A DNA stretch of 64,000 nt from IMGVR_UViG_3300030107_006644:141518-205517, one strand, 5' to 3'. Shown: positions 15,999-30,510, counted from the stretch's first letter. Program-made: numbers and translations. Notes: generated by a model from the sequence alone, not told the origin.

Positions 15999-16001
15999 TA
16001 T

Positions 16002-17269: not shown

Positions 17270-17573
17270 CGGCGAAAGGCTACAAGTTTACAAATACACG
17301 GCAGAAGATGAGAACGGACAGATAGTGTTTTACTACACATACCCCGAGAAAAGCGAGAGAATCGTCAAGAGGGTTGAAGACAAGATTAAACAAGATGTGA
17401 TCGTGTTCGATATATTTCCGGGCTTAATCAATGGTGACGAAGAACTAGAAGAGGCAATATGGGTGACAACGCAAATACAAACTCCCATGTATCTTCCGGC
17501 AGGCATGGGCGTAACTATGCATGACTTTGGAACCATACTATACGGAATCGCAGAAGATGACGAAGACTCTTGA
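17250..17573 (+). CDS. Acidic hypothetical protein
   Basis: 107 aa; its stop TGA lies inside the first TTGACA of promoter element P1. Confidence 0.7.
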   Translation: MELGKNSGERLQVYKYTAEDENGQIVFYYTYPEKSERIVKRVEDKIKQDVIVFDIFPGLINGDEELEEAIWVTTQIQTPMYLPAGMGVTMHDFGTILYGIAEDDEDS

Positions 17574-17624
17574 CATGTTGCTGACAACTTTTCCATTGAC
17601 AGGCGGGTCGTGATGAGCTATATT
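17570..17624 (+). promoter_or_regulatory. Triple-box sigma70-type promoter element P1
   Basis: TTGACA 17570, CTGACA 17581, TTGACA 17596, 17 bp, TATATT 17619. Confidence 0.9.
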
Positions 17625-17647
17625 ATTAGGGTAAACAGGAGGAAGCC

Positions 17648-17923
17648 TTGAAGGTTGGAGATTTGGTAACGCTTTCATCTTATGGTAAGCGCATTAACTA
17701 TATGGGTAAGTGCATAGCCCAGCGAAAATATAACGGAGGATTTCGTGGCCCGTTGATTGGGCTGGTTATCGCAAAAGTCGAGCCCACACATTCGTGGGAG
17801 AAGCAAATGAAGTATTCGGTTGCATGGATTGATAACTGCGAGTTCAATCCACAAGGTCGAGATAACTGGGTGAAGTATTTTCACCGCAAAGACCTTAAGA
17901 TGGTCAAAAAAGCAAAGAAGTAA
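17648..17923 (+). CDS. MKVGDLV-family SH3/KOW-like protein
   Basis: MKVGDLVTL...IGLVIA...YSVAW...DLKMV; AGGAGG SD. Confidence 0.8.
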   Translation: MKVGDLVTLSSYGKRINYMGKCIAQRKYNGGFRGPLIGLVIAKVEPTHSWEKQMKYSVAWIDNCEFNPQGRDNWVKYFHRKDLKMVKKAKK

Positions 17924-17933
17924 GGAGATAAAC

Positions 17934-18257
17934 ATGCATAGAACAATGATTATGACAATCGCAACGCTGATGGCAGCAGCAGCATACGCAGATGAACCCC
18001 CAACAGCGGTCGAAGTGCCAGCTACCGCAACGACACAGCCAGTGCGCGTAGTTACAGGTACGGTTGTCGATTCAATGGGCGGATCTGACCTCCACGGGGG
18101 ATGGGTCAAGGTTCATTTGGATGGTCAGCCCGAAGGACTAATCAACACCTTCAGCGATATTGTCTTTCCGCACACCTGTACCACACTCGGTGATAAGTTC
18201 TACATCGTCTTTGGTAGCGTTACAACCAGTATTACATGCGGGGAACCAACCAAGTGA
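17934..18257 (+). CDS. Secreted hypothetical protein
   Basis: Signal peptide ending AAAYA; AAGGAG SD. Confidence 0.7.
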   Translation: MHRTMIMTIATLMAAAAYADEPPTAVEVPATATTQPVRVVTGTVVDSMGGSDLHGGWVKVHLDGQPEGLINTFSDIVFPHTCTTLGDKFYIVFGSVTTSITCGEPTK

Positions 18258-18556
18258 GAAAGAAACTTAACAAAACCGTGGTGTGCGCTGATGGGTTCTC
18301 CATGAGCGTGCAGGCCAATGGCACCGCTTATTGTCATCCTCGTCAGGAGCATGCAGAGCAGTACACGGAGGTCGAGATCGGCTTTCCTAGCGAGGAGGAA
18401 GAGTTGCTGATGGAGTGGGCAGAGAATCCCAGTGAGCCGACCGATACCGTGTATGCGTGGGTGCCTGCTGGACGTGTTTCGCTCGTTATCGCAAAGCATG
18501 GCGGCATGGTGTCGGGGGAACTTCCTCCCGGCATTCCGCGACTGGAAGCCTGTTGA
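18254..18556 (+). CDS. Hypothetical phage protein
   Basis: CADGFSMSVQA...YCHPR...EVEIGFPS; stop lies inside P2 box 1. Confidence 0.75.
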   Translation: MRKKLNKTVVCADGFSMSVQANGTAYCHPRQEHAEQYTEVEIGFPSEEEELLMEWAENPSEPTDTVYAWVPAGRVSLVIAKHGGMVSGELPPGIPRLEAC

Positions 18557-18607
18557 CATTTACTTGACAAAGTTTTCCTTGACTTTGCGCTCACTGTAGA
18601 GTATATT
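18553..18607 (+). promoter_or_regulatory. Triple-box promoter element P2
   Basis: TTGACA 18553, TTGACA 18564, TTGACT 18579, 17 bp, TATATT 18602. Confidence 0.9.
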
Positions 18608-18613
18608 ATTTGT

Positions 18614-18871
18614 ATGAAACGGAAGTTGAACATTGGCGATTTGGTGCGAGTCACCGAGGACACACACGATTCAAGGATGCCTCCCTCACGCACTGGTCTG
18701 ATTGTGAGTCAGGTTTGCGAAGAGGCATGGAATGATGAAAAGGTGCCTGTCGGCGTGTTTAACGTATGGATGACGAACGGTGAAACTCTAAGGTTTCACG
18801 AAATGTTCTTGGTAAAGGTCGAAAGGGTCGAAAGGGTCGAAAGGAACGAAGATGAGAAGAGAGAAGATTAA
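18614..18871 (+). CDS. MKVGDLV-family SH3/KOW-like protein, probably leaderless
   Basis: LNIGDLVRV...TGLIVS...FNVWM; ATG 7 nt after the -10 hexamer, no SD. Confidence 0.75.
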   Translation: MKRKLNIGDLVRVTEDTHDSRMPPSRTGLIVSQVCEEAWNDEKVPVGVFNVWMTNGETLRFHEMFLVKVERVERVERNEDEKRED

Positions 18872-18948
18872 ACGGGCGTTGCGCCAAACTCTGCGGATCC
18901 TAATCCTAGGCTATCCCGCTATTTATTTCTAAACTACTGGAGAAAATC

Positions 18949-19098
18949 ATGGAAATCGGTACTATTGTTCAACACTTTGTGTGTGATTATCGAGGTCGAA
19001 TCGTGGCCATGGCCAATGGTCTGGTTCACGTCCTTGTCGATGGCGTTGGCGTTGTGGAAGATCGTGTTGAGAACTTTGTCTTGTCCGAAGCGGCTTGA
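18949..19098 (+). CDS. MKVGDLV-family SH3/KOW-like protein (49 aa, not in the ORF track)
   Basis: MEIGTIVQH...GRIVA...VHVLV; GGAG SD; stop lies in P3 box 1. Confidence 0.7.
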   Translation: MEIGTIVQHFVCDYRGRIVAMANGLVHVLVDGVGVVEDRVENFVLSEAA

Positions 19099-19149
19099 CA
19101 TTTTCTTGACAGGAAACCACTTGACGAATGAGCGTTTGGTGAGTATATT
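19095..19149 (+). promoter_or_regulatory. Triple-box promoter element P3
   Basis: TTGACA 19095, TTGACA 19106, TTGACG 19121, 17 bp, TATATT 19144. Confidence 0.9.
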
Positions 19150-19175
19150 ATATGGGTAAGCAGGAGAAAGCAAAC

Positions 19176-19373
19176 ATGGAACTTGATACACCTTTTGATA
19201 ATGCAGCTATCGCATGCGAATGCATTGTAACATCTGTCGCCTTTGCCTCGCAGGTAATCGAGGCGCAGAAGAAACTTCAACTACAGCCAGAAGAAAATCG
19301 TGAAATGGTTTCTATTCTACTGGAAACCTATGCTATCGCATGGCTGGAAGCAGACGGAGCAGCGCAAGCCTGA
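19176..19373 (+). CDS. Hypothetical protein
   Basis: AGGAG SD, ATG 19176. Confidence 0.65.
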   Translation: MELDTPFDNAAIACECIVTSVAFASQVIEAQKKLQLQPEENREMVSILLETYAIAWLEADGAAQA

Positions 19374-19660
19374 TGAAGACTGTAATCGTATTCGACACCG
19401 ATGATGAAGAGGGCATGCGTAATGCCTTCAAGATCGTTGATCATCTTTCAATGCAGTATCTCAACCAACGCTTGCGTGCGATGACTCCAACGGAGATTCG
19501 TTTCGGTCGGATCGAGTTTATAAAGATGATCCGTGCATATGCGAAACATATTACAGACGCTCAAAAGGCTGACGCCAAGGTAGACATTAACAGTCTTAGA
19601 TTCAACAAAGAGTATGCTGATAAGATTTGGCAGGAGAAACGCGCAAAGGCACTGATATGA
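19373..19660 (+). CDS. Hypothetical protein
   Basis: TGATG coupling to the upstream gene. Confidence 0.7.
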   Translation: MKTVIVFDTDDEEGMRNAFKIVDHLSMQYLNQRLRAMTPTEIRFGRIEFIKMIRAYAKHITDAQKADAKVDINSLRFNKEYADKIWQEKRAKALI

Positions 19661-19758
19661 AACACAACGAAGAACCAAAAACCGATCCACTATTCACTGC
19701 ATACCTGTGTGTGTGCGTGTTCTGGATGCTCGCTGCTAGTGTCGCAGCGGCAAGTTAA
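19657..19758 (+). CDS. Possible 33-aa membrane peptide
   Basis: ATGA coupling; hydrophobic; stop lies in GTTAAACCT. Confidence 0.4.
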   Translation: MKHNEEPKTDPLFTAYLCVCVFWMLAASVAAAS

Positions 19759-19779
19759 ACCTTCCGGCGGAGAAAACCA

Positions 19780-19917
19780 ATGGCTAAGAAGAAAATCAAA
19801 ACCATCAAACCTCGCAACTGGCTGGCGCTTCATGCCCGTCGTCGTCGCGGTGGTCCGATGAGGGATCGAAAGAAGGCAGCGAACAAGAAGGCATGCCGTG
19901 GGAGAGTCCATGCATAA
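19780..19917 (+). CDS. Small highly basic protein (45 aa, not in the ORF track)
   Basis: MAKKKIKTIKPRNWLALHARRRRGGPMRDRKKAANKKACRGRVHA; GGAG SD. Confidence 0.65.
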   Translation: MAKKKIKTIKPRNWLALHARRRRGGPMRDRKKAANKKACRGRVHA

Positions 19918-20230
19918 GAAGCTGATCGGAGCACTCGTTCGGTTCTTGCCTGTTGGCAACTATCATGAGTTTCACAATGCTGTGGGTATGGTGACTTCGC
20001 ATAATAAACCTTCACATGTTCGCGTCAAGTGGATCAAGCCTGTTCACTATGCCGTTCACAGCGAACACTACAAGTTTCATGGACCGGCGACGGTTTCGGA
20101 CTTTGACCTCGACCGGCTTGAAGTGATCAGTAGCGTACTTAGTGACGAGCAGCTTGAAAGCGTTGTCGGTGGTATGAGTCCAGAAAGTTTTAGTAACTGG
20201 CGAGCGGAGAAGTTAAATGAAAGTCGGTGA
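19910..20230 (+). CDS. MKVGDLV-family SH3/KOW-like protein
   Basis: LIGALVRF...VGMVT...VRVKW...RLEVIS; ends NESR overlapping the next start. Confidence 0.7.
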   Translation: MHKKLIGALVRFLPVGNYHEFHNAVGMVTSHNKPSHVRVKWIKPVHYAVHSEHYKFHGPATVSDFDLDRLEVISSVLSDEQLESVVGGMSPESFSNWRAEKLNESR

Positions 20231-20387
20231 TTTGGTTTGGATTGATTGGAATAGTTACCCAGAAGAGGCGTTCACTGCATCCGGCGTTATCATTAAGGAT
20301 GAGGGATTTAGCTTCTTTAGGGTCTTGTTTAACGGTGAGCAGAGGGTTTTCCATTCTGATTATCTGGAGGCACTCAATGAAGCATAG
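20217..20387 (+). CDS. MKVGDLV-family SH3/KOW-like protein (56 aa, not in the ORF track)
   Basis: MKVGDLVWI...SGVIIK...FRVLF...YLEALNEA. Confidence 0.8.
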   Translation: MKVGDLVWIDWNSYPEEAFTASGVIIKDEGFSFFRVLFNGEQRVFHSDYLEALNEA

Positions 20388-20565
20388 TGGTGCGCCGAGT
20401 GTGGGCGATCTCGTTGTGGCGCTCTATGACGAGCAGCGAGGACTCAAGTGTATCGGCCTTGTTTTAGATTGCCGAGGTATTGAGTGTCGAATCAAGTGGG
20501 CTTCGCGCAGCGACCCTATTGGGTGGTGGAGAAGAGATCAGTTAAGGGTTGTGCATGCCGCTTGA
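20377..20565 (+). CDS. MKVGDLV-family SH3/KOW-like protein
   Basis: PSVGDLVVA...IGLVLD...RIKW...QLRVV; GGAGG SD inside the upstream gene. Confidence 0.75.
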   Translation: MKHSGAPSVGDLVVALYDEQRGLKCIGLVLDCRGIECRIKWASRSDPIGWWRRDQLRVVHAA

Positions 20566-20618
20566 AGTCTTGGCAATAATGGTTATTTGGATATGTTTTT
20601 GGATATTAAGGGAGAAGT

Positions 20619-20822
20619 ATGAAAGTCGGTGATCTCGTTATTATGCCTGATCAGAAGCTGCTGAAGGATGAGCCTGTACCTATTGCCGTCGTGCTGCAAA
20701 CAAAGCATGATGGCATCAACCGAGGCACAAGCCATAAGCGTGTTAGGGTTCACTGGATTCAAGATAATGAAAGATCATGGGAGCCTGTGAAGTGGCTGGA
20801 GGTAATCAGTGCGGTTAGTTAG
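20619..20822 (+). CDS. MKVGDLV-family SH3/KOW-like protein
   Basis: MKVGDLVIM...VRVHW...WLEVIS. Confidence 0.8.
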   Translation: MKVGDLVIMPDQKLLKDEPVPIAVVLQTKHDGINRGTSHKRVRVHWIQDNERSWEPVKWLEVISAVS

Positions 20823-21141
20823 AGACATAAAGTTAGTTAGAGATTTAATCCCTCGCATCATCGAGGAGGAAGGAGGCACATGCAACAGTCGCACGGTTCA
20901 CGGGGTCGATGAACACCTTGTCTTTCTTAGAGTCAAGATGATCGAAGAGGTGAATGAGTTTATTGTGGATCCATCTTATGAAGAGGCTGCAGACATGTTA
21001 GAGGTTCTAAAAGCCTTTTGTTTATTAAATGGCTTGGATTTTGATACCGTGGTCAGCACGGCGCAAAGCAAACAAGAGGAGCGCGGAGGATTTCATCGCG
21101 GAGTCATCTTGCAGGAGGTAACAAACAGTGAAGATCGGTGA
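20809..21141 (+). CDS. MazG-like / phosphoribosyl-ATP pyrophosphohydrolase-family NTP pyrophosphatase
   Basis: KLVRDLIPRII...KMIEEVNEF...EE.AD.LEV...K.EERGGF. Confidence 0.85.
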   Translation: MRLVRDIKLVRDLIPRIIEEEGGTCNSRTVHGVDEHLVFLRVKMIEEVNEFIVDPSYEEAADMLEVLKAFCLLNGLDFDTVVSTAQSKQEERGGFHRGVILQEVTNSEDR

Positions 21142-21334
21142 CTTGGTAAGATGGTGCGGAAAAATCTGCGTTGTTACGGAGGTTTATGAAAGCAAGATAT
21201 GGCGCACCGACAAAATGGGAAAGATGGTGCGTTGGGGAGAGATTGAACCCGAGCCTTTCGCCCGAATCTTGCTTGGCGATGAGCTGCGTGGTGTGCCGCA
21301 AACGGACCTAGAGGTAGTCAGTGGGTGCAGCTAA
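21128..21334 (+). CDS. MKVGDLV-family SH3/KOW-like protein
   Basis: MKIGDLVRW...DLEVVS. Confidence 0.8.
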   Translation: MKIGDLVRWCGKICVVTEVYESKIWRTDKMGKMVRWGEIEPEPFARILLGDELRGVPQTDLEVVSGCS

Positions 21335-21573
21335 ATGTAACCATACTTCCCGGCGATCTGCTATGGCAGTTGCGACCTCCGCACGGAGTCTGCCTATTGT
21401 TGGAGATAAAAGACCTTCCACAAGACGTTCGCTCAATGAAAGGCTGGATTTCTCAAGACTATCCAGTATACAGACTATTACATCAAGCTGGGTTCATTTT
21501 TGAGGATCCCCATTACTATTACGAGAAGTTAAACCTTAGCCGACAGGAGAAACAAGATGGCAACTTGTATTAA
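21325..21573 (+). CDS. Divergent SH3/KOW-like protein
   Basis: ILPGDLLW...VCLLLE...YRLL. Confidence 0.6.
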   Translation: MQLNVTILPGDLLWQLRPPHGVCLLLEIKDLPQDVRSMKGWISQDYPVYRLLHQAGFIFEDPHYYYEKLNLSRQEKQDGNLY

Positions 21574-21754
21574 ATGTGAAGAAGAATATAACGATAAGCG
21601 ACTAGCCCTAGGCTACCGCACATGCTTGGACTGTGGCGGTCGCGATGCCAACAGGATCAGTCGAGCGAGAACAGCACAGGTTCTCAAGTCAATGACGCCA
21701 AATCATTATGAAGGTAGTCCCGAAGACCTGTTCGATAAGCCCGACGAGTCTTGA
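21557..21754 (+). CDS. C4 zinc-finger protein (DksA/TraR-finger-like)
   Basis: CIKCEEEYNDKRLALGYRTCLDCG; stop lies in P4 box 1. Confidence 0.65.
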   Translation: MATCIKCEEEYNDKRLALGYRTCLDCGGRDANRISRARTAQVLKSMTPNHYEGSPEDLFDKPDES

Positions 21755-21805
21755 CATTTACTTGACAACTGCACCCTTGACTTTCCCGGTCAGGGGTGCT
21801 ATATT
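21751..21805 (+). promoter_or_regulatory. Triple-box promoter element P4
   Basis: TTGACA 21751, TTGACA 21762, TTGACT 21777, 17 bp, TATATT 21800. Confidence 0.9.
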
Positions 21806-21832
21806 ATAGGGGTAATCAGCAAGGAGTATACA

Positions 21833-21997
21833 GTGAACTTGACAGAAGATGAAATCGTTGACCTGATCGACTGCGTTAACAATCGCATTGATGACCTGAT
21901 GGACTGCGCCATGTTTGGCGATGCCGTCGAGATTGAGAGCGAGATTGAGAGGATGAATGAACTATCAACTAAACTTAGCGAAGCATTGGAGGCTTAA
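21833..21997 (+). CDS. Small very acidic helical protein (54 aa, not in the ORF track)
   Basis: AAGGAG SD, GTG start; 16 D/E versus 3 K/R. Confidence 0.7.
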   Translation: MNLTEDEIVDLIDCVNNRIDDLMDCAMFGDAVEIESEIERMNELSTKLSEALEA

Positions 21998-21999
21998 AC

Positions 22000-22365
22000 A
22001 TGGGCTATCGTTCAACAGCTATTCTCGCGGTCAGCAAAGAGGCTCGACCGTATCTTATGCACTTTCTCGGTAAAACACCGGCTGCTATGGAACTTTGTTT
22101 CGGACCACATGCGGATCGTACCGAAGACTTCCAAGGCGAAGAAGGGTCGGTCATGTTTCGTTTCGACAGCATTAAGTGGTACGAGGGCTATAAGGAGATC
22201 GACGCTATCGAGTCCTTCATGAGCCACATGGACTGCGACGAAGCAGAAGAACTGGGCGAGGGATGCGAGCATTATCGCTTTGTACGTACTGGCGAAGAGT
22301 ACGAGGATATTGAACAGCGTGGTTATGCCTTTGACATTCACCCGTCAGTCGGTATCGAGTATTAA
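22000..22365 (+). CDS. Acidic hypothetical phage protein
   Basis: MGYRSTAILAV...IKWYEGY...YRFVRTGEEYED. Confidence 0.75.
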   Translation: MGYRSTAILAVSKEARPYLMHFLGKTPAAMELCFGPHADRTEDFQGEEGSVMFRFDSIKWYEGYKEIDAIESFMSHMDCDEAEELGEGCEHYRFVRTGEEYEDIEQRGYAFDIHPSVGIEY

Positions 22366-22393
22366 AGTTAAAGGTTGATAACAGGATCATAAC

Positions 22394-22591
22394 ATGAAGT
22401 ATACAATACCGCAAGCAGGATCGATGATCGGCGCTCTCGCTACTGGTGAGAACATCAAAGGGATTCAGATCGTTGTCGAGTACAAGTGTGACGCGAAAGG
22501 CGAGTGGATTCGATTCATTAAAGATCCACCAGATCATTGGTGGGATCTTAGCAATATAAACATTATTTCAAAGAAGGAACAGAATGGCTAA
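22394..22591 (+). CDS. Hypothetical protein
   Basis: 65 aa, AGGA SD. Confidence 0.6.
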   Translation: MKYTIPQAGSMIGALATGENIKGIQIVVEYKCDAKGEWIRFIKDPPDHWWDLSNINIISKKEQNG

Positions 22592-22856
22592 CTTAGCATT
22601 TTCAGGAGAGAAGGTATCGCAGGACGAGGTGAAGAAAGCGTTGATGGCTATTTTAGCCGAGGACTGGCCCGAAGCCTTTACCGTAGACTTTCATTCAGAC
22701 GGTGGAGGATCGGTGGTTCGCGCCATCGTCGAATGTCACAACACCGACGATCATTTAGACAAGTCCTTGACTGACAAGCTGCCACTTAAGTTTATGGGAT
22801 GGCGACTTGTGATATTAAAGGTTCCTATTGGTCATGTTGGAGTCTTTTACTCCTGA
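22584..22856 (+). CDS. Hypothetical protein
   Basis: 90 aa; stop lies in P5 box 1. Confidence 0.7.
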   Translation: MANLAFSGEKVSQDEVKKALMAILAEDWPEAFTVDFHSDGGGSVVRAIVECHNTDDHLDKSLTDKLPLKFMGWRLVILKVPIGHVGVFYS

Positions 22857-22907
22857 CATTCTCTTGACAACTTTGCTATTGACTTCGACCCTCGCAGGTG
22901 CTATATT
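22853..22907 (+). promoter_or_regulatory. Triple-box promoter element P5
   Basis: CTGACA 22853, TTGACA 22864, TTGACT 22879, 17 bp, TATATT 22902. Confidence 0.9.
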
Positions 22908-22932
22908 ATATGAGTAACCAAGGAGAGTACAC

Positions 22933-23604: not shown

Positions 23605-23764
23605 AACTAACTCATGGGTGATGCAGCGGGACGACTATGCAAATCCCGGTGTGATCGTGGAAGACGTGTCTGGCGTGAGCACCCGACGCTACCGAGTCAT
23701 GTGGGCCGATCAGAGAATCACGGTCGAACATGAAGGTTATCTTAAACCTTTGACATCTTCTTGA
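23576..23764 (+). CDS. SH3/KOW-like array gene 3
   Basis: MQVGDLVKF...PGVIVE...YRVMW; stop lies in P6 box 2. Confidence 0.8.
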   Translation: MQVGDLVKFETNSWVMQRDDYANPGVIVEDVSGVSTRRYRVMWADQRITVEHEGYLKPLTSS

Positions 23765-23803
23765 CAAGATCCGCTTGACTTCCATGCTCGCCCATGCTAT
23801 ATT
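23750..23803 (+). promoter_or_regulatory. Triple-box promoter element P6
   Basis: TTGACA 23750, TTGACA 23761, TTGACT 23775, 17 bp, TATATT 23798. Confidence 0.9.
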
Positions 23804-23825
23804 ATATGGGTAATCAGGGAGAGAT

Positions 23826-24539: not shown

Positions 24540-24735
24540 TCTATACAGGTTTGACCGTATCAACGGTCACACAACAACCGTGAATGGCCGGTTGGCGATT
24601 TATTTGGGCGAAGCCTTCATCCGTCGAGACGATGGCGTGACCATCGAGAACCACAGGGTTTTGATGGTTGGGAACACAAGCCCGACGATCATTGATCGCG
24701 GCCTGCTGAAGCACATGCGAGAGGTGACAGCATGA
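24526..24735 (+). CDS. SH3/KOW-like array gene 8
   Basis: MQVGSLYRF...LAIYLG...HRVLM...MREVTA. Confidence 0.75.
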   Translation: MQVGSLYRFDRINGHTTTVNGRLAIYLGEAFIRRDDGVTIENHRVLMVGNTSPTIIDRGLLKHMREVTA

Positions 24736-24905
24736 AAGTCGGTGATCTGGTAACACAGTCGCATGCCGGGAGTAATACAGGCATCATCATAGCCATCGAT
24801 CCCGAAGAAATCGGAGATTCAAAAGAAGTGCTGGTATTCTGGGACGATGGCGAAGTTTGGAACCATTCGATGCGGTTTCTGGAGGTGATCAGTGCAAGAT
24901 CCTAG
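24732..24905 (+). CDS. SH3/KOW-like array gene 9 (57 aa, not in the ORF track)
   Basis: MKVGDLVTQ...TGIIIA...VLVFW...FLEVISARS. Confidence 0.8.
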   Translation: MKVGDLVTQSHAGSNTGIIIAIDPEEIGDSKEVLVFWDDGEVWNHSMRFLEVISARS

Positions 24906-25092
24906 ACCTTGGAAGGTGGGCGATCTAGTCAGGATTAAACGCACTGGTGAGACTGCGTTGATATTGTACGTTGCCGATGCGTCCATCGGCTGCAAAATGA
25001 TTAAGATTCATACGGGCGAGTATTTCGCCCCTTGGAAGTTAAACCTTGTTAGCAAGGGAGCTAACAAGGTCGAAGAAGGGAGAGAGGAATGA
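24892..25092 (+). CDS. SH3/KOW-like array gene 10
   Basis: WKVGDLVRI...TALILY...KLNLVS. Confidence 0.8.
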   Translation: MQDPRPWKVGDLVRIKRTGETALILYVADASIGCKMIKIHTGEYFAPWKLNLVSKGANKVEEGREE

Positions 25093-25442
25093 TGCCGATT
25101 TGGGTTTTTATGGTTCGCTACGATGGCGAAATGGCTTGCAGTACGCACTTGACGGAGAAGGGCGCGATCCTGACCGCGATTGAAGACGTGCTGCAGTACC
25201 TTGGAGTAGAAGACGAAGAGGACGCGAAGAACATATTTAGCGAACCGAGAAGATACAGTAATGTTTCCGCAGTCGAAGCAGCACTGAAAGAAGACGAGGT
25301 TCAACCTCCCGAATGGGATATTGGAAAGATGCAGAAGATGAATCGTGAACAACTTTATCGAGTCTATGCCGGATGGTGCGAGAAGACGTGGGATCACCAC
25401 ATCTACGAGTGCGAGATCATGAAAACGACGGTGACCGGATGA
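25089..25442 (+). CDS. Acidic hypothetical protein
   Basis: 117 aa; ATGA coupling at both ends. Confidence 0.75.
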   Translation: MMPIWVFMVRYDGEMACSTHLTEKGAILTAIEDVLQYLGVEDEEDAKNIFSEPRRYSNVSAVEAALKEDEVQPPEWDIGKMQKMNREQLYRVYAGWCEKTWDHHIYECEIMKTTVTG

Positions 25443-25762
25443 AGTTAAACCTTGAAGCTGCACCCGTCGAGGTTGTCTGGCCGCCGTGTCTCTCGACTAT
25501 CGGAGGCAAGCGATATGCGATCAGCGGCAACGTCTGGATCGAAGTACCGATGTCCACCGTGTTCGACGATTTGCCTCGATATATGGTCTGTGAGGCCCGC
25601 AAAGCCCCTGTGACGGCTCCGTGTCAGTCATGGGAGGTACAGGGTAGCAAAGGCAACAAGTACGCTGTGAGGCTGTCTGAGGGTGTCTGGTCCTGCTCAT
25701 GTCCCGGCTACTCGTTCCGTCGCAAATGTCGCCATATTGAGGAAAAGAAGATTGAAGTTTAA
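25439..25762 (+). CDS. SWIM zinc-finger protein
   Basis: GSKGNKYAV...WSCSCPGYSFRRKCRHI. Confidence 0.8.
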   Translation: MKLNLEAAPVEVVWPPCLSTIGGKRYAISGNVWIEVPMSTVFDDLPRYMVCEARKAPVTAPCQSWEVQGSKGNKYAVRLSEGVWSCSCPGYSFRRKCRHIEEKKIEV

Positions 25763-25937
25763 GGTTGGTGACTTGGTGACTTGGAGGAATGGCCTTGCTC
25801 AACCTCCCGGTATCATATTAAAGGTTTCCACCGAAAGGCGTGCGTACCTTATTTGCTTTCCGCATAAGAGCGTCACCCAGTGGTGTCCCGACGAGTTCTT
25901 GAACCAGTTGACAACCTCTTTACAAGAAAATCCTTGA
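25752..25937 (+). CDS. MKVGDLV-family SH3/KOW-like protein
   Basis: FKVGDLVTW...PGIILK...YLICF; stop lies in the -35 box of P7. Confidence 0.75.
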   Translation: MKFKVGDLVTWRNGLAQPPGIILKVSTERRAYLICFPHKSVTQWCPDEFLNQLTTSLQENP

Positions 25938-25962
25938 CTTTGGGCCTGAAAGACTATATATT
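25908..25962 (+). promoter_or_regulatory. Triple-box promoter element P7
   Basis: TTGACA 25908, TTTACA 25919, TTGACT 25934, 17 bp, TATATT 25957. Confidence 0.88.
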
Positions 25963-25986
25963 ATAGGGGTAACAAGGAGAGATACC

Positions 25987-26181
25987 ATGCAACCCGTGAT
26001 TCCACTTGACAAGATTCTTGAGCGCATGCGCGAAGAGCAACAGCCCGAGCGCCCAGCTTTGCGACTGTATGCACCCGAGCCTTCACCCGGTGATCCTCGC
26101 GACCATGAGTGGCCACCACGCCGGATCGAAGAAGACGAGCAGCCCGAAAGAGGGGTTGCAATCATTGATTTCACGATTTGA
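25987..26181 (+). CDS. Small hypothetical protein
   Basis: AAGGAG SD; EQQPERPALRLY...RGVAIIDF; stop lies in P8 box 1. Confidence 0.75.
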   Translation: MQPVIPLDKILERMREEQQPERPALRLYAPEPSPGDPRDHEWPPRRIEEDEQPERGVAIIDFTI

Positions 26182-26231
26182 CATTTCCCTGACATTTTAG
26201 ACTTGACTTTCTCTCTTCCCTGTGAGATAAT
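26178..26231 (+). promoter_or_regulatory. Triple-box promoter element P8
   Basis: TTGACA 26178, CTGACA 26189, TTGACT 26203, 17 bp, GATAAT 26226. Confidence 0.85.
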
Positions 26232-26254
26232 ACAGGGGTAATCAAGGAGATCCC

Positions 26255-27058
26255 ATGCCCCGTGTGACCTACGCCGACCGCTTCGCTGCCCTTCTCGCCC
26301 GCCCGCTATCCAGTAGCGACCGGAGATTCTGCGAAAGTCTGCGAGACTTCTACCAGCGCAAAGGTCGCCTGACCTCTGGGCGTGTGCGGTGTTTTAAGCA
26401 GCTTGAGGAGCGTTACAGTGCCGAGAGGCTAGCCGAGGCTGCAGAGCGCGGCGGGCCGATGCTCAAGCGATTGAGCGGCCTTCTGCCCCGCGTGGAGGGC
26501 AACAAATGGGCAAGCGGATTCGTGATGAGTCTATCCCAACAAGTTCAAGGAGGGCGCAATCTCTCCGACAAGCAGATTACAATGCTTGAAAAGATCGAGC
26601 GAGAAAACAGTGATGAAGCAATCGCAGCACGACAGACATGGCATCTTGATTATGATGACGACAAGCGTTTGCGTGCGATGGTCGCGGCTCGATACTACCG
26701 GGAGAGCGGAGGCTACTTCCGCGATCTGGTTAACAAGATTCTTGAAAACCCTGACTTCGTGCCGTCCCAGCGGCAGTACAGGTCTATCACCGAGAACAAG
26801 TATGCACAGAAGGTCTTGGATGCCCATTTCGCCGCGCCTAAGTACGCGGTCGGGTCATTCGTCGCGATGCGCTCCAGCGCACCGTGGGCATGCCGTAGCG
26901 GGGCCGGAAACAAGCCTTGCGTTGTCATCCAGACCGATGCCGCTCCTGTCGTCAGTGCAGCCCGAGGAGTCAAGCGTTACAAGGTGCTGCCCATCGGATC
27001 GGCAAGGCCGATCATTGTCGAGGAGCGACACATTAAAGCTGCGAGAGGACTTAAATAA
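26255..27058 (+). CDS. Hypothetical protein with C-terminal SH3/KOW-like domain; paralog of 1638..2255
   Basis: RYY..GGYF..L..KIL.NPDFVPS..QY..IT.NKYA.KVL...YAVGSFV...IVEERHIK. Confidence 0.8.
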   Translation: MPRVTYADRFAALLARPLSSSDRRFCESLRDFYQRKGRLTSGRVRCFKQLEERYSAERLAEAAERGGPMLKRLSGLLPRVEGNKWASGFVMSLSQQVQGGRNLSDKQITMLEKIERENSDEAIAARQTWHLDYDDDKRLRAMVAARYYRESGGYFRDLVNKILENPDFVPSQRQYRSITENKYAQKVLDAHFAAPKYAVGSFVAMRSSAPWACRSGAGNKPCVVIQTDAAPVVSAARGVKRYKVLPIGSARPIIVEERHIKAARGLK

Positions 27059-27061
27059 CCA

Positions 27062-27228
27062 GTGCGGCCCCACCACATATATAACTAAAGGTGGGATTCA
27101 ATGCCTTGAGTGAATCCACTGCGCTCCACCAGTCCCTTTGCGGGATGAGGACGTGAACCCGAGAGGGAGTCGAAACAAGGCTGGCGAGGAAGACGCGGTA
27201 AGGACAGCGATCATCGGTGGGGCCGCAC
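27062..27228 (+). ncRNA. Candidate structured ncRNA, 167 nt
   Basis: Perfect 13-bp terminal inverted repeat GTGCGGCCCCACC/GGTGGGGCCGCAC enclosing hairpins GGATTCA/TGAATCC, GTCCC/GGGAT and CCC-GAGA-GGG; no ORF. Confidence 0.6.
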
Positions 27229-27266
27229 CCCCTTCAACTTAAACCTTTGAACTTTTGAGAAAACAC

Positions 27267-27665
27267 ATGAAAGTAGAACTGACCGACATTGAGATTATCC
27301 ACATTATGAACGCGCTTAAGCTGACAGCCAACAAGCTCCGCGAAAAGCACTCGATTTCTGGTGACATGGAGCAAGCCGATCTTGCCGACGAACTTGAAGA
27401 GATCGAGTTTGACTTGTTTGAGGCTGTCAATCGACGCGATGACGACTGGCTAGCCGACCGAGACGATCCCACAGACCTTATGGGCCAAACGCTCTCAGAG
27501 CCGGATGCTGCCCTTTCATTCGTGCAGGCAGGCATTGACGCCCGCGAGCAAGTTAAAGGTTCCTCAATGGCCGCACAACGCCGGGAAGAGCAGGTTAAGC
27601 GCATGATGAAAGGTACAGCCACACCACGCGATCCTGACTTCATGAATGATCCGGTGGACTGGTAA
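27267..27665 (+). CDS. Acidic hypothetical protein
   Basis: ATG 27267; helical and D/E-rich. Confidence 0.7.
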   Translation: MKVELTDIEIIHIMNALKLTANKLREKHSISGDMEQADLADELEEIEFDLFEAVNRRDDDWLADRDDPTDLMGQTLSEPDAALSFVQAGIDAREQVKGSSMAAQRREEQVKRMMKGTATPRDPDFMNDPVDW

Positions 27666-27677
27666 ATCAAACCTCTC

Positions 27678-27732
27678 TTGACATTCTCTTTACAACTTTA
27701 ACCTTGACTTCCTCACTCATATCGGCTATATT
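27678..27732 (+). promoter_or_regulatory. Triple-box promoter element P9
   Basis: TCAAAC 27667, TTGACA 27678, TTTACA 27689, TTGACT 27704, 17 bp, TATATT 27727. Confidence 0.88.
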
Positions 27733-27777
27733 ATAAGGGTAAGAACGAGTTGAACCCCCTGACTTTGGAGATTTTAC

Positions 27778-28560
27778 ATGGGTAACTATTCTGGAACTAT
27801 TCGATGCGGTCACTGTTACGAGCGAGGCCACAATCGGGCTGGCTGCGAGAAGCTGACCGAGCAACTTGCTACACAATGGAGTCGCATCGAGACTGCGGGG
27901 TATGATGATGACAACTATACTCATAAGCGCACCCGTCAAATGCTAGCCAAGCGTCAGGGGTCTGACCCTCTCACTGGTGAGAGCACCCGCAAGCGTCGGG
28001 CGACCTACGGAGGCCGCAAGTGCTCATACTGCGGCGAGCCGGGTCACACTCGTCGCACTTGTCCGTCGATGAAGACTGACAAACAGAACTATCGCACGTT
28101 GACTGCAGCATCGCGCTCGACCCTCATTGAACGCATGCGCGAGCATGGTTTCGGACCCGGCTCGCTCTTGACTACCGTGTCAAAGGATTGGGAGGATGGC
28201 GAGTACAAGACCCGCACGGTCCCGATGATTGTCAAGTCCGTGGACTGGGAAGCGATCCACCAACGGACATGGGGCAGTCAGGGTCAGGGTGGCCCCGAAT
28301 GTGTCACAGTGCTCCGCATGAATGATAGCCGCATCGTTCAGATTATGCTTCCTAACTGCGTTACAGGCTACGATCCTAGCTGGAATCGCGTTGAGCTTGC
28401 TGGTCGAGTAGAGGACGTGCAGCCTCCCGCTGGATGGCTCGATGCATCGGAACTCGACTCCAAGACCATGGGCCAAGTGGTCGAACTCTTTGAAACTGGG
28501 GTTGCCCGCGACTACTACTGGTGGCAGCGACAGCCCGAAATAGAAGGACAGGAAGGTTAA
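27778..28560 (+). CDS. Protein with two CCHC zinc knuckles
   Basis: CGHCYERGHNRAGC and CSYCGEPGHTRRTC. Confidence 0.8.
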   Translation: MGNYSGTIRCGHCYERGHNRAGCEKLTEQLATQWSRIETAGYDDDNYTHKRTRQMLAKRQGSDPLTGESTRKRRATYGGRKCSYCGEPGHTRRTCPSMKTDKQNYRTLTAASRSTLIERMREHGFGPGSLLTTVSKDWEDGEYKTRTVPMIVKSVDWEAIHQRTWGSQGQGGPECVTVLRMNDSRIVQIMLPNCVTGYDPSWNRVELAGRVEDVQPPAGWLDASELDSKTMGQVVELFETGVARDYYWWQRQPEIEGQEG

Positions 28561-28567
28561 ACCTTTC

Positions 28568-28622
28568 TTGACATTCTCTTGACAACTTCGCTATTGACTT
28601 TTCCTCTCCCCTGTGGGATAAT
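28568..28622 (+). promoter_or_regulatory. Triple-box promoter element P10
   Basis: TTAAAC 28557, TTGACA 28568, TTGACA 28579, TTGACT 28594, 17 bp, GATAAT 28617. Confidence 0.88.
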
Positions 28623-28651
28623 ACAGGGGTAATCGAGCAAGGAGCTATCCG

Positions 28652-29212
28652 ATGACTGACACGCCGACCACTTCTGACCTTCGCGCCCTCAAGCTGACCG
28701 AGGACGAATGGCACTCACTCATGCACATGGGTGAGTTTGATCCTATTCGCGCTCACATGGATATGCTTGTGCTGGCTGGGCTTGCCGTGCGAACGCACAT
28801 TCACCCGCCCGAATGGGATCTGACCGAGGCCGGTCACGCAGCCTGCAACGCGATTGATCTCATCCTCGACTGGGATGACTTTGTATTCGTAGGCGACGGA
28901 GAGGACACCGAGCCTTTCGGCGTTATTCAGCTTGAGAACGCTTCTGATGCCTCTGATACGGTCTTCCTGAATGGTGAGCCTATCGAGCGCAGCGAAGCCG
29001 TAGAACTGGCTTCTGAGGCCCCTAAGCGCATCGGCGTAGGATCGCTTGTGCGCCACCAGCACCACGGCGAAGGTCTAGTGACCGATCATTTCATGTGGGA
29101 TGGCGACTGGGGCGGCTTCAGGATTAAACTTCTTAAACCTTCCCAAACTGGCGCTACAACCTCGATTACCGAGTTTAGTGACCGCGCCGATTCCTTTGAA
29201 CTTGTAAGTTAA
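28652..29212 (+). CDS. Acidic hypothetical protein with C-terminal SH3/KOW-like domain
   Basis: IGVGSLVRHQHHGEGLVT...FRIKL...FELVS. Confidence 0.75.
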   Translation: MTDTPTTSDLRALKLTEDEWHSLMHMGEFDPIRAHMDMLVLAGLAVRTHIHPPEWDLTEAGHAACNAIDLILDWDDFVFVGDGEDTEPFGVIQLENASDASDTVFLNGEPIERSEAVELASEAPKRIGVGSLVRHQHHGEGLVTDHFMWDGDWGGFRIKLLKPSQTGATTSITEFSDRADSFELVS

Positions 29213-29219
29213 ACCTCTC

Positions 29220-29274
29220 TTGACATTTACTTGACAAGATAATCCTTGACCTTTTACCCCCACCGTGCTATATT
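29220..29274 (+). promoter_or_regulatory. Triple-box promoter element P11
   Basis: TTAAAC 29209, TTGACA 29220, TTGACA 29231, TTGACC 29246, 17 bp, TATATT 29269. Confidence 0.9.
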
Positions 29275-29323
29275 TATAATGTGAGCGAGGGATGAACCCT
29301 CGCCTTGACCTAGGAGTCCTATC

Positions 29324-30391
29324 ATGGCTGTCGATTTCGCCACTTTCCGTTCTGTCGTTCCTCATGTCACTGCTGCCCGCTTCCCCGTGCTCTTGCGCGG
29401 TCGTCACGGTGTCGGTAAATCACAGGTTGTTTATCAGCTTGCAGGCGATCTCGATCTCCCCGTTGTGGAGCGTCGAGCTTCGCAAATGACCGAGGGCGAT
29501 CTTCTCGGCCTTCCGTCTACCGATGGCGCGACCACCCGATGGAACCCGCCTGTCTGGTTTAAGACCGCGTGCGAGACTCCTGTTGTGCTCTTTCTGGATG
29601 AGGTTGACCGTGCGACGGTCGAGGTCCGTCAGGGCATTTTCGAGTTGACCGATAGCCGCAAGCTGGCTGGGTTCTCGCTCCATGAGGACACGATCATCAT
29701 CGCAGCCGTCAACGGTGGCGAACATGGCGCTCAATATCAGGTCGGCGAAATGGACCCGGCAGAGCTTGACCGCTACACGGTCTTCGACGTTGAGCCTTCC
29801 CATGAGGATTGGCTTGAGTGGGCGAAGTCTAACGTCGATGGCGTCGTTTGGGACTTCATCAACAACAATCGGAACCACCTTGAGCACGCTGGCGACTTTG
29901 AGCCGAACAAGGTTTACCCTTCCCGTCGTTCGTGGGATCGGCTCAATCAGGCTGCGACTGGTGCGGCTCTCTTTGAAGAGGGTGCCGATCTCGGTCTGCT
30001 CTACAACCTGACTTGCGCGTTTGTCGGCTTTGAAGCTGGCGTTGCGTTCAAGGACTTCGTTGAGAACTATTCCCGTCAGGTCACTGTCGAGGATATTTTG
30101 GTCAAGGGTGAGATTGACCGTACCTCCGAGTTCACGATCAACGAGCACAGTGCTTTGGTCGAAAAGATGGAGGCAACCGAGACTTTCGCGGATCACCTGC
30201 CTTCCGAGCAGATTCAGAACCTCGCTGATTTCTTCGTCACGCTGCCTTCTGAAGTTGCTATGAAGCTGTGGACCGTCATGGGTAACGGCGAGATCCAGAA
30301 CACTGTCGATCTCCACCAGTCCACTGCGTCCGATGGTCGCTCCGTGTCTGGATACCTCGTTGAGCTTCTGACCGGCGAGGCAGCAAGTTAA
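29324..30391 (+). CDS. MoxR-like AAA+ ATPase
   Basis: Walker A GRHGVGKS, Walker B LFLDEVDR, MDPAELDRY, YPSRRSW. Confidence 0.92.
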   Translation: MAVDFATFRSVVPHVTAARFPVLLRGRHGVGKSQVVYQLAGDLDLPVVERRASQMTEGDLLGLPSTDGATTRWNPPVWFKTACETPVVLFLDEVDRATVEVRQGIFELTDSRKLAGFSLHEDTIIIAAVNGGEHGAQYQVGEMDPAELDRYTVFDVEPSHEDWLEWAKSNVDGVVWDFINNNRNHLEHAGDFEPNKVYPSRRSWDRLNQAATGAALFEEGADLGLLYNLTCAFVGFEAGVAFKDFVENYSRQVTVEDILVKGEIDRTSEFTINEHSALVEKMEATETFADHLPSEQIQNLADFFVTLPSEVAMKLWTVMGNGEIQNTVDLHQSTASDGRSVSGYLVELLTGEAAS

Positions 30392-30400
30392 ACCTTGAAC

Positions 30401-30432
30401 GTCCCCCGCTTGTCGGGGGACTTAAACCTTTC
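30401..30432 (+). terminator. GC hairpin flanked by TTAAACCTT direct repeats; probable intrinsic terminator
   Basis: GTCCCCCG-cttgt-CGGGGGAC (8 bp) followed by ttaaacctttct. Confidence 0.55.
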
Positions 30433-30487
30433 TTGACATTCTCTTGACAACTTTGCCCTTGATTTTTTCGCTCCAGCGTGCTATATT
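30433..30487 (+). promoter_or_regulatory. Triple-box promoter element P12
   Basis: TTAAAC 30422, TTGACA 30433, TTGACA 30444, TTGATT 30459, 17 bp, TATATT 30482. Confidence 0.88.
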
Positions 30488-30510
30488 ATATGTGTAGTAA
30501 GGAGATTTCT

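What the first reader, a model, noticed from the sequence alone, without database searches (positions are those of the whole stretch)
17570..30487. Twelve promoters with an invariant triple-TTGAC geometry partition a 13-kb early region into cassettes
Seen: all 12 elements have box 1 (T/C)TGACA, box 2 exactly 11 bp later, a -35 box 15 bp later (14 in P6 and P8), a 17-bp spacer, TATATT/GATAAT, and usually a GGGTAA..AAGGAG leader. Spacer sequences differ, so spacing rather than sequence is conserved. Six other sigma70 promoters in the window (33354, 39131, 55353, 55883, 57594, 63086) lack the extra boxes. Established: PeSL promoter cassettes shuffle small genes in T4-type phages. Inference: a dedicated regulon in which a helically phased tandem site (or RNAP pre-binding boxes) controls the accessory genes, with the elements doubling as recombination joints. 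This is the strongest candidate for an undescribed system here.
Basis: partly seen in the sequence, partly recalled or inferred. Interest (0 to 1): 0.85.

Follow-up and report, generated by a model that had tools for sequence, protein, structure and literature searches.

The report
Phage promoters with two extra upstream boxes
Twelve strong, host-type promoters in the probable early-gene region of an uncultured ~205-kb marine phage each carry two extra TTGACA boxes at a fixed distance upstream, an architecture shared by about a hundred related environmental phage contigs, not found in the one cellular-genome scan or in the papers searched, and best explained as a docking site for an unidentified regulator.

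Summary
All 12 elements are on the + strand. Each has box 1, then box 2 exactly 11 bp later, then the -35 hexamer 15 bp later (14 bp in P6 and P8), a 17-bp spacer and TATATT or GATAAT.

The window is the last 64 kb of IMG/VR contig 3300030107_006644 (205.5 kb), a phage with no cultured relative. About 95 IMG/VR contigs share the architecture. In 26 loci fetched through a protein, not through the motif, 196 of 205 boxed promoters keep the 11-bp spacing. One scan of 185,579 cellular genomes gave a single hit.

The trait is all-or-none per lineage. Sister clades carry A-tract, UP-like sequence at the same place in the orthologous promoter. Some members of the boxed clade carry other modules there (GTGACA repeats 10 bp apart, or a GGACA-N5-TGTCC palindrome) while the -35 stays the same. 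Position 6 of the boxes is A in 88-95% of cases, against 21% in the real -35.

Best reading: a clade-specific upstream module read by a tandem-binding protein, not by sigma or alpha.

The box TGA serves as the stop codon of the upstream gene in 86% of cases. Homology blocks between relatives end in the elements 3.4 times more often than expected. The elements are not PeSLs, because they lack the stem-loop. Verdict: a new variant of a known kind.

The parts
17570..17624 (+). P1: box 1 TTGACA, box 2 CTGACA (+11), -35 TTGACA (+15), 17-bp spacer, TATATT
   Evidence: The TGA of box 1 is the stop codon of ORF 17250-17573.
18553..18607 (+). P2: TTGACA / TTGACA / TTGACT / TATATT. The ATG of the next gene lies 6 nt after the -10, so the mRNA may be leaderless.
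   Evidence: The TGA of box 1 is the stop codon of the upstream gene.
19095..19149 (+). P3: TTGACA / TTGACA / TTGACG / TATATT
   Evidence: The TGA of box 1 is the stop codon of the upstream gene.
21751..21805 (+). P4: TTGACA / TTGACA / TTGACT / TATATT, with TG extended -10
   Evidence: The TGA of box 1 is the stop codon of the upstream gene.
22853..22907 (+). P5: CTGACA / TTGACA / TTGACT / TATATT. Synteny breakpoint against relative L122.
23750..23803 (+). P6: TTGACA / TTGACA / TTGACT (14-bp offset) / TATATT. Synteny breakpoint against L122.
   Evidence: The TGA of box 2 is the stop codon of the upstream gene.
25908..25962 (+). P7: TTGACA / TTTACA / TTGACT / TATATT
   Evidence: The TGA of the -35 hexamer is the stop codon of the upstream gene.
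26178..26231 (+). P8: TTGACA / CTGACA / TTGACT (14-bp offset) / GATAAT. An inverted repeat CCCTGT..ACAGGG brackets the -10.
27678..27732 (+). P9: TTGACA / TTTACA / TTGACT / TATATT
28568..28622 (+). P10: TTGACA / TTGACA / TTGACT / GATAAT, preceded by GTTAAACCTT
29220..29274 (+). P11: TTGACA / TTGACA / TTGACC / TATATT, upstream of the MoxR-type AAA ATPase gene (29324-30391)
30433..30487 (+). P12: TTGACA / TTGACA / TTGATT / TATATT, upstream of the DUF2201 metallopeptidase/VWA gene (30511-31707)
30402..30422 (+). The only G+C-rich hairpin lying directly upstream of one of the 12 elements (before P12)
32804..32819 (-). Thirteenth TGACA-N6-TGACA pair (GTGACA type). It lies about 75 nt upstream of the minus-strand promoter below.
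32707..32735 (-). Convergent minus-strand promoter (two TTGACAC boxes 8 bp apart, 17-bp spacer, TATACT) pointing at gene g44. Homologous antisense promoters face g44 homologues in relatives.
32177..32497 (+). g44, 106 aa. It is the gene whose presence best tracks the boxed-promoter clade. Confident model, unknown fold. A candidate regulator by co-occurrence only.

Best explanation
Each element is a strong promoter for the host's sigma-70 RNA polymerase: a near-consensus -35, a 17-bp spacer, a -10 that often has TG in front, and then a ribosome-binding site.

Fused to it is a clade-specific upstream module of two 7-8-bp boxes, (C)TTGACA(T/A), in direct repeat exactly one helical turn apart. With the -35 hexamer numbered -35 to -30, the boxes are centred at about -58.5 and -47.5.

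The module sits where sister phages have an A-tract UP-like element. It is most likely read by a sequence-specific protein that binds as a tandem (head-to-tail) pair and helps recruit polymerase. On this reading it replaces the UP element and ties one 13-kb block of small accessory genes into a single regulon.

The twelve promoters are co-directional and, except before P12, have no terminator between them, so transcription should add up along the block.

As side effects, the TGA inside the boxes terminates the upstream gene, and the roughly 75-bp repeats act as occasional recombination joints.

Shown: the anatomy, the conservation, the lineage distribution, the stop-codon use and the breakpoint enrichment.

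Inferred: that a protein other than sigma or alpha reads the boxes, that the effect is positive, and that these genes are early.
For: Geometry beyond chance:
- In the window.
- In promoters not selected by the motif: upstream TGACA words pile up only at two offsets.
- 196 of 205 boxed promoters in 26 ATPase-anchored loci have the 11-bp spacing. The distance to the -35 is 15 bp in 166 and 14 bp in 27. A rigid pair with a slightly flexible link to the core promoter fits an upstream factor.

The boxes obey other rules than the -35:
- Position 6 is A in 88-95% of boxes and is followed by a conserved T or A.
- The true -35 has A there in only 21% of cases.

Lineage pattern:
- The trait is all-or-none per locus: 3-13 elements or none.
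- It is concentrated in one clade of the ATPase tree.
- At the orthologous promoter of the same ATPase gene, sister clades have A-tract UP-like sequence.
- Some members of the boxed clade have other modules with an unchanged -35: GTGACA and ATTACA 10 bp apart in L123, GTGACA twice in L171, and a GGACA-N5-TGTCC palindrome centred near -62 in L141.

Distribution:
- A strict pattern scan of 185,579 cellular genomes gave one hit. About 95 IMG/VR contigs have the pattern.
- In long contigs the elements cluster in one region next to the ATPase.
- All elements are on the coding strand.

The only other box pair in 64 kb lies upstream of an antisense promoter that faces the clade-specific gene g44.
Against: - No reader protein was identified. 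Pfam found no sigma, HTH or winged-helix domain in 82 small window proteins or in the clade-specific gene clusters near the ATPase.
- g44 has a confident model but no known fold. Its co-occurrence with the boxes is confounded by phylogeny, and L124 has boxes but no g44 in the stretch fetched.
- The boxes match the sigma-70 -35 consensus exactly. That would be an odd coincidence for an independent reader.
- The core promoter is already near-consensus, so an activator is not obviously needed.
- Genes transcribed before any phage protein is made cannot depend on a newly made phage factor. The factor would have to be a host protein, be injected with the DNA, or act later.
- Neither the timing of expression nor the transcription start sites were measured.
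Confidence: 0.4

Rival explanations
1. Same kind of reader, opposite sign. The box pair is an operator for a phage-made protein that shuts off (or times) this promoter class after the early phase. It would spare host and other phage promoters that have only a single -35. Phage phi29 protein p4 acting on its early promoters is the precedent (from memory).
For: - The core promoters are near-consensus, and 7 of 12 have an extended -10, so they should fire without help.
- The module is specific to phages and is all-or-none per lineage.
- The same genome has a second promoter class without boxes, so the two classes could be controlled separately.
- A further box pair sits at an antisense promoter that faces a clade-specific gene, which looks like a regulatory circuit.
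Against: - The boxes lie wholly upstream of the -35 (-61 to -45), not over the core promoter.
- The true -35 avoids the box form: A at position 6 in 21% of cases. A reader would therefore not compete with sigma there.
- The boxes take the place of a positive element (UP-like A-tracts) in orthologous promoters rather than being added to it.
- No repressor candidate was found.
Confidence: 0.2
2. RNA polymerase itself reads the boxes. They would act as extra landing sites for sigma region 4, or as an unusual alpha-CTD (UP-type) element, raising capture of polymerase with no additional factor.
For: - The boxes are the exact sigma-70 -35 consensus and lie in the -40 to -60 zone, where UP elements act.
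- Sister phages have A-tract UP-like sequence there.
- This needs no factor, which suits genes transcribed right after infection.
Against: - Conservation within the boxes is the reverse of what is known for sigma region 4 (from memory): A-C-A is kept and positions 1 and 3 vary (CTGACA, TTTACA, GTGACA, ATTACA), and position 6 is far more conserved than in the real -35.
- One lineage has a palindrome in place of the boxes, which sigma region 4 cannot read the same way.
- The conserved G and C in the box core do not fit the A/T minor-groove binding of alpha-CTD. The box centres (-47.5 and -58.5) are out of phase with the usual alpha sites (from memory).
- No -10-like hexamer lies 17 bp after box 1 or box 2.
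- Cellular genomes do not use this architecture.
Confidence: 0.2
3. A host response regulator of the OmpR/PhoB type binds the pair, coupling phage early-gene output to host physiology such as phosphate status. This is a special case of 'a protein reads the boxes', with the reader supplied by the host.
For: - The pair is a direct repeat with an 11-bp period, made of a conserved part of about 7 bp and a pyrimidine-rich linker of about 4 bp.
- Read on the other strand, the pair is TGTCA-N6-TGTCA. That is the core and spacing of the proteobacterial Pho box (from memory).
- Variants such as TTTACA, ATTACA and GTTACA resemble other sites of this protein family.
- A host factor is present at the moment of infection.
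Against: - The orientation is opposite to classical Pho boxes. The site lies upstream of an intact -35 rather than replacing it.
- The host is unknown.
- A palindromic variant exists.
- The resemblance is recalled from memory, not tested.
Confidence: 0.1
4. The boxes have no role in transcription. They persist as part of a repeat that spreads by recombination (a cassette joint or selfish repeat), or because they supply stop codons to whatever gene lands upstream.
For: - 313 of 365 upstream ORFs end at a box TGA; in the window the figure is 8 of 12.
- Homology-block ends are enriched 3.4-fold in the elements.
- Element pairs share up to about 30 identical bases.
Against: - The 11-bp spacing is invariant over more than 400 diverged elements while the spacers drift. 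That points to selection on geometry, not on mere homology.
- With the 11 + 15 geometry the TGAs cover only two of the three reading frames.
- About 80% of breakpoints lie elsewhere.
- Other lineages put different motifs at the same position relative to the -35.
Confidence: 0.07

Closest known systems
PeSL (promoter-early stem-loop) cassettes of T4-type phages (PMC2839356, PMC4122927)
   Same: Repeated sigma-70-type promoters, each with a Shine-Dalgarno sequence and a start codon, scattered between small genes of unknown function in a plastic region. They coincide with insertions and replacements between close relatives, and the repeats are long enough for recombination.
   Different: There is no stem-loop upstream, except before P12. 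The region upstream of the -35 holds two rigidly spaced boxes rather than AT-rich sequence. The phage shows no T4 hallmark in the window. Most breakpoints are not at the elements.
UP element of strong bacterial and phage promoters, bound by the alpha C-terminal domain (from memory: Ross 1993, Estrem 1998)
   Same: The position (about -40 to -60) directly upstream of a strong sigma-70 core. Sister phages carry A-tract UP-like sequence at the orthologous promoters.
   Different: The sequence is G/C-containing TTGACA repeats, not A/T tracts. The box centres are out of phase with the usual alpha sites. The trait is lineage-specific and all-or-none.
Tandem direct-repeat sites of OmpR/PhoB-family response regulators, such as the Pho box (from memory)
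   Same: Two direct repeats with an 11-bp period, a conserved part of about 7 bp plus a linker of about 4 bp. The TGACA core is the complement of the TGTCA of the Pho box at identical spacing.
   Different: The orientation relative to the gene is reversed. The site lies upstream of an intact consensus -35 instead of replacing a poor one. Binding was not tested and the host is unknown.
Phage-encoded regulators that read repeats at sigma-70 promoters: lambda CII (TTGC-N6-TTGC), P2 Ogr and P4 delta (site near -55), phi29 p4 (from memory)
   Same: A phage-specific protein reads a short repeated site next to, or upstream of, the -35 of a set of phage promoters, and so defines a temporal class.
   Different: The sequences and positions differ. 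The CII sites straddle a weak -35. No homologue of these proteins was detected in the window.

Membership tests
PeSL cassette | Sigma-70-like early promoter followed by a Shine-Dalgarno sequence and the start codon of the next gene | tested here: met
   All 12 have a -35, a 17-bp spacer and a -10. A GGAG-type ribosome site and a start codon follow 22-49 nt after the -10 in 11 of them, and 6 nt after it in P2.
PeSL cassette | Stem-loop (terminator-like) immediately upstream of the promoter | tested here: not met
   Terminator-like sites are no more frequent than in shuffled sequence (20 against 15.9). Only the hairpin at 30402-30422, before P12, fits. The definition is taken from PMC4122927.
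PeSL cassette | AT-rich region upstream of the -35 | tested here: not met
   Two conserved TTGACA boxes occupy that region.
PeSL cassette | Located among variable small genes and coinciding with indels or replacements between close relatives | tested here: met
   P5 and P6 are synteny breakpoints against L122. Block ends fall in the elements 39 of 194 times against 11.4 expected. About 80% of ends lie elsewhere.
PeSL cassette | Host genome is a T4-like myovirus | not testable with these tools
   No T4 hallmark family is present in the 64-kb window. The other 141 kb of the contig was not read.
UP element | Lies between about -40 and -60, upstream of a sigma-70 core promoter | tested here: met
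   The boxes span -61 to -56 and -50 to -45 when the -35 hexamer is numbered -35 to -30.
UP element | A/T-rich consensus (A-tracts and T-tracts) | tested here: not met
   The box core G-A-C is 80-92% conserved. A-tracts are seen only in sister clades.
UP element | Bound by the alpha C-terminal domain | not testable with these tools
   This needs footprinting or transcription with alpha-CTD-deleted polymerase.
OmpR/PhoB-type tandem site (Pho box) | Two or more direct repeats with a period of 10-11 bp | tested here: met
   The period is 11 bp in 196 of 205 promoters and 10 bp in L123 and L171.
OmpR/PhoB-type tandem site (Pho box) | TGTCA core on the coding strand, overlapping or replacing a weak -35 | tested here: not met
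   The core is present only on the opposite strand. The site lies upstream of an intact TTGACY -35.
OmpR/PhoB-type tandem site (Pho box) | Bound by a response regulator | not testable with these tools
Lambda CII-type activator site | TTGC-N6-TTGC repeats flanking a poor -35 | tested here: not met
   The sequence and position differ, and the -35 is near consensus.

The most novel reading that the evidence does not exclude
A large clade of abundant, uncultured ~190-205-kb marine phages replaced the A-tract UP element of its early promoters with an operator for a dedicated tandem-binding transcription factor of unknown fold. That factor might be the clade-specific g44 family, which is itself faced by a box-rich antisense promoter. 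Sub-lineages then swapped the operator type: TTGACA with an 11-bp period, GTGACA with a 10-bp period, or a GGACA/TGTCC palindrome. This would be a new, portable phage regulon whose operator also supplies the stop codon of the upstream gene and acts as a joint between gene cassettes.
Probability: 0.3. Interest if true: 0.75.

Novelty: new variant of a known kind. Interest (0 to 1): 0.58.

Why it matters
Phage early promoters decide how a virus wins the competition for the host's polymerase. The known solutions are UP elements, polymerase modification, and phage-made activators or repressors.

Here a whole clade of environmental phages shows a different upstream solution that is very strictly conserved. 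Natural swap experiments sit next to it: sister clades with UP-like tracts, and sub-lineages with other box types.

This gives a concrete, testable handle on transcription control in phages that have never been cultured. It also offers short, modular promoter parts whose function can be assayed in laboratory bacteria. Finally, it extends the idea of promoter cassettes as joints for gene shuffling beyond the T4-type phages examined in the PeSL papers.

Tried and rejected
- Cultured relatives. Megablast and blastn of the region and of one promoter against 50,697 phage records gave no match. tblastn of several proteins gave at best 30% identity for the ATPase, 44% for GroEL (best hits not clearly phage) and nothing for g37.
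- The 544-aa multi-HTH protein (33457-35091) as the box reader. Rejected: it carries an HNH-like C-terminus by eye, is sporadic among relatives and is absent from L122, so it looks like a homing-endonuclease-type gene.
- PeSL membership. Rejected because the stem-loop is missing.
- Boxes as extra promoters. No -10-like hexamer lies at the right distance from box 1 or box 2.
- Cellular use of the architecture. One hit in 185,579 genomes.
- Domain search for a DNA-binding protein. Nothing in 82 small window proteins or in the clade-specific clusters.
- g44 as reader. The AlphaFold model is confident (pLDDT 88) but has no PDB fold match. Its subfamilies do not follow the box variants. It remains only a co-occurrence lead.
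- Profile-based locus search with the g44 alignment.
- Rfam on the structured region at 27.06-27.23 kb. No credible family.
- Literature. Three full-text searches found no description of promoters with phased -35-like boxes upstream.

Full report
**1. What is in the window**

A script that searched for the best box positions gave these results:
- Box 1 to box 2 is 11 bp in all 12.
- Box 2 to the -35 hexamer is 15 bp in ten, and 14 bp in P6 and P8.
- The spacer is 17 bp in all 12.
- The -10 hexamer is TATATT in ten and GATAAT in two (P8, P10).

Seven promoters also have TG in front of the -10. The pattern 'two TTGAC plus a -10' occurs 13 times against 0.11 expected. TGACA-N6-TGACA occurs 11 times against 0.19 expected.

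All elements are on the + strand, as are the genes. A ribosome-binding site and a start codon follow 22-49 nt after the -10. P2 is the exception: its ATG is 6 nt away, so the mRNA may be leaderless.

The other sigma-70-like promoters in the window lack the boxes and have A/T-rich upstream sequence. Only P12 has a hairpin upstream, and terminator-like sites are at chance level. The twelve promoters therefore stand in series along one co-directional block of about 45 mostly small genes with no family match.

**2. What genome this is**

The window is the last 64 kb of IMG/VR contig 3300030107_006644, which is 205,517 bp long. Its recognisable contents are:
- a GroEL;
- a 1,746-aa protein with an M23 peptidase domain;
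- a MoxR-type ATPase next to a DUF2201/VWA protein;
- a tmRNA and several tRNAs;
- an asparagine synthase;
- a PIN-PhoH protein.

Nothing in 50,697 deposited phage genomes is close. This is an uncultured lineage whose contigs come from many different metagenome samples.

**3. The architecture is a family trait**

Many of these contigs are 170-205 kb long. Nearly every hit continues with a -10 hexamer after a 17-bp spacer and with a ribosome-binding site.

Two tests avoid selection by the motif:
- Among 291 sigma-70-like promoters in those loci that did not match the search pattern, upstream TGACA words pile up only at the two expected offsets.
- In 26 loci fetched through the ATPase protein, 205 of 242 promoters have two upstream boxes. 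The box-to-box distance is 11 bp in 196 of them. The distance to the -35 is 15 bp in 166, 14 bp in 27 and 16 bp in 1.

The pair is therefore rigid, and its link to the core promoter tolerates one base of slack. In long contigs the elements lie in one region next to the ATPase gene. A strict three-box pattern found one match in 185,579 bacterial and archaeal genomes, so cells do not use this design.

**4. The boxes are not just more -35 hexamers**

The frequency table of 171 unselected promoters reads:
- Box 1: T75 T92 G80 A92 C90 A88, followed by T76 T68.
- Box 2: preceded by C85, then T89 T93 G80 A92 C92 A95, followed by A71.
- The true -35 has A at position 6 in only 21% of cases (T in 48%).

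The variants seen (CTGACA, TTTACA, GTGACA, ATTACA) keep A-C-A and change positions 1 and 3. From what is known of sigma region 4, T-T-G matters most and position 6 least. The boxes thus show a different reading pattern.

**5. Natural swaps**

Promoter type is all-or-none per locus: 28 of 80 ATPase-anchored loci have 3-13 boxed promoters, and most of the rest have none. On the ATPase tree the trait sits in one clade (27 of 34 members) plus L124.

Upstream of the same ATPase gene, sister clades (G+C 37-45%) have A-tract, UP-like sequence directly before the -35.

Inside the boxed clade some members carry other modules while the -35 stays TTGACY:
- L123 has GTGACA or GTTACA followed by ATTACA, 10 bp apart.
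- L171 has GTGACA twice, 10 bp apart.
- L141 has a GGACA-N5-TGTCC palindrome centred near -62.

The same slot, filled by different sequence-specific modules in different lineages, is what a co-evolving DNA-binding protein would produce. Sigma or the alpha subunit would not.

**6.

- The multi-HTH 544-aa protein at 33457-35091 is sporadic and looks like a homing endonuclease.
- Pfam found no sigma or HTH domain in 82 small window proteins, nor in the gene clusters restricted to the boxed clade.
- The best co-occurring gene is g44 (32177-32497). It is present in 25 of 28 boxed loci, 4 of 7 variant loci and 0 of 45 sister loci.
- The g44 model is confident (pLDDT 88): three strands and a helix, then a long basic helix. 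It matches no solved structure.
- The only further TGACA-N6-TGACA pair in the window lies on the minus strand at 32804-32819. It is upstream of a strong minus-strand promoter (32735-32707) that points into g44. Homologous box-rich antisense promoters face g44 homologues in many relatives.

This looks like a regulatory circuit. However, the association is confounded by ancestry, g44 subfamilies do not follow the box variants, and L124 has boxes without g44 in the stretch fetched. g44 is a lead, not a finding.

**7. Cassette behaviour**

Against L122 (ATPase 86% identical) the promoter-proximal genes stay with their promoters (g22, g26, g36, g37, g39-g42). P5 and P6 are breakpoints:
- g21|P5|g22 in the window, g21|P|g31 in L122;
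- g25|P6|g26 in the window, g25|P|g22 in L122.

Over 13 pairs of relatives, ends of homology blocks fall in the elements (plus or minus 25 bp) 39 of 194 times against 11.4 expected. Two cautions apply: intergenic position alone may explain part of this, and about 80% of ends lie elsewhere.

A second kind of joint is the 34-nt junction repeated between the paralogous 'KVGDLV' genes. One of those genes, g31, is a 97.7%-identical island in a 70-90% background.

One regularity appears to be new. Of 365 upstream ORFs that read into 446 unique elements, 240 stop at the TGA of box 1, 59 at that of box 2 and 14 at that of the -35. In the window the figure is 8 of 12.

**8. Mechanism**

The evidence favours a tandem-binding protein that reads the pair, over polymerase reading it by itself (sections 4 and 5).

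An activating, UP-replacing role is preferred, for two reasons: the module stands in for a positive element in orthologous promoters, and the -35 avoids the box form. A shut-off operator cannot be excluded, because the core promoters are already strong.

The 11-bp direct repeat, and the identity of its complement with TGTCA-N6-TGTCA, recall OmpR/PhoB-type sites. This resemblance comes from memory and is not tested. The orientation and the position both differ from classical Pho boxes.

**9. Comparison and verdict**

The elements work like PeSL cassettes as repeated promoter joints, but they fail the stem-loop and AT-rich criteria. They occupy the UP-element position but fail its sequence criterion. 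Three literature searches found no description of this design.

The finding is real, widespread and undescribed. It is a new variant of a known kind, the phage promoter cassette with an upstream regulatory module, rather than a new category.

Noticed in passing
window 14132-32803, + strand (exact copies at 14132, 19754, 21528, 25038, 25444, 28556, 30387, 32654, 32794): The motif GTTAAACCTT occurs 25 times with at most 1 mismatch, against 3.6 expected. It is almost always on the + strand and in any reading frame. It lies at gene boundaries: directly before box 1 of P6 and P9-P12, 16-41 nt before the start codons of g9, g17, g33 and g38, and on both sides of the P12 hairpin and of the antisense promoter. 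It is nearly absent from close relatives. Its function is unknown; it may be a second joint or signal.
   Followed up: partly
window 17648-25937, densest at 23274-25092: An array of at least 15 paralogous genes of 54-91 aa begins M(K/Q)VGDLV. Consecutive genes overlap by about 14 nt, so each start codon lies inside the end of the previous gene, and a 34-nt junction is repeated 10 times. There is no Pfam or PHROG match. One copy (g31) is 97.7% identical to L122 in a 70-90% background, which suggests recent exchange.
   Followed up: partly
window 27062-27232, + strand, between g37 and g38: A structured RNA-like element of about 170 nt is closed by a 13-bp stem (-70 kcal/mol, z = -3.0). Its core is conserved in 8 relatives, with 4 covarying pairs and invariant GACGCGG and ACAGCG blocks. 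No Rfam family matches.
   Followed up: partly
window 32707-32735 (- strand); L006, L021, L026, L050, L055 and others: A strong minus-strand promoter converges on g44. Relatives have a conserved box-rich promoter (GGACA..TGAC-TTGACAC..TATACT-AAACAC) that would give a C/A-rich transcript without an ORF, antisense to their g44 homologue.
   Followed up: partly
window 26000-32000: G+C rises to 54-56% and the GC skew falls to about 0, against 38-50% G+C and positive skew elsewhere. The block holding P8-P12 and the ATPase/VWA pair differs in composition from the rest of the window.
   Followed up: no
window 33457-35091: A 544-aa protein has several HTH_17/MerR-type domains and, by eye, an HNH-like C-terminus. 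It is sporadic among relatives and looks like a homing-endonuclease-type mobile gene.
   Followed up: yes
window 54371-58227: A phage-borne tmRNA (tag peptide ANNNNHFDSVRLAA) and tRNAs Arg, Leu, Lys and Gly, plus a weak tRNA-like hit at 55923. Some follow unboxed sigma-70 promoters at 55883 and 57594.
   Followed up: no
window 26212-26240 and 28603-28631: In the two GATAAT promoters (P8, P10) an inverted repeat (CCCTGT..ACAGGG) brackets the -10 hexamer. This may be an extra operator or a DNA-level structure.
   Followed up: no
window 32900-33250: A low-complexity CA/TG-rich stretch without a convincing ORF lies between the antisense promoter and the promoter at 33354.
   Followed up: no
window 21557-21754 (g17) and 27778-28560 (g39): Two small zinc-binding proteins are encoded in the block. 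One is a 65-aa C4 finger of CxxC..CxxC type. The other is a 260-aa protein with two CCHC knuckles. Both also occur in sister clades without boxes.
   Followed up: partly
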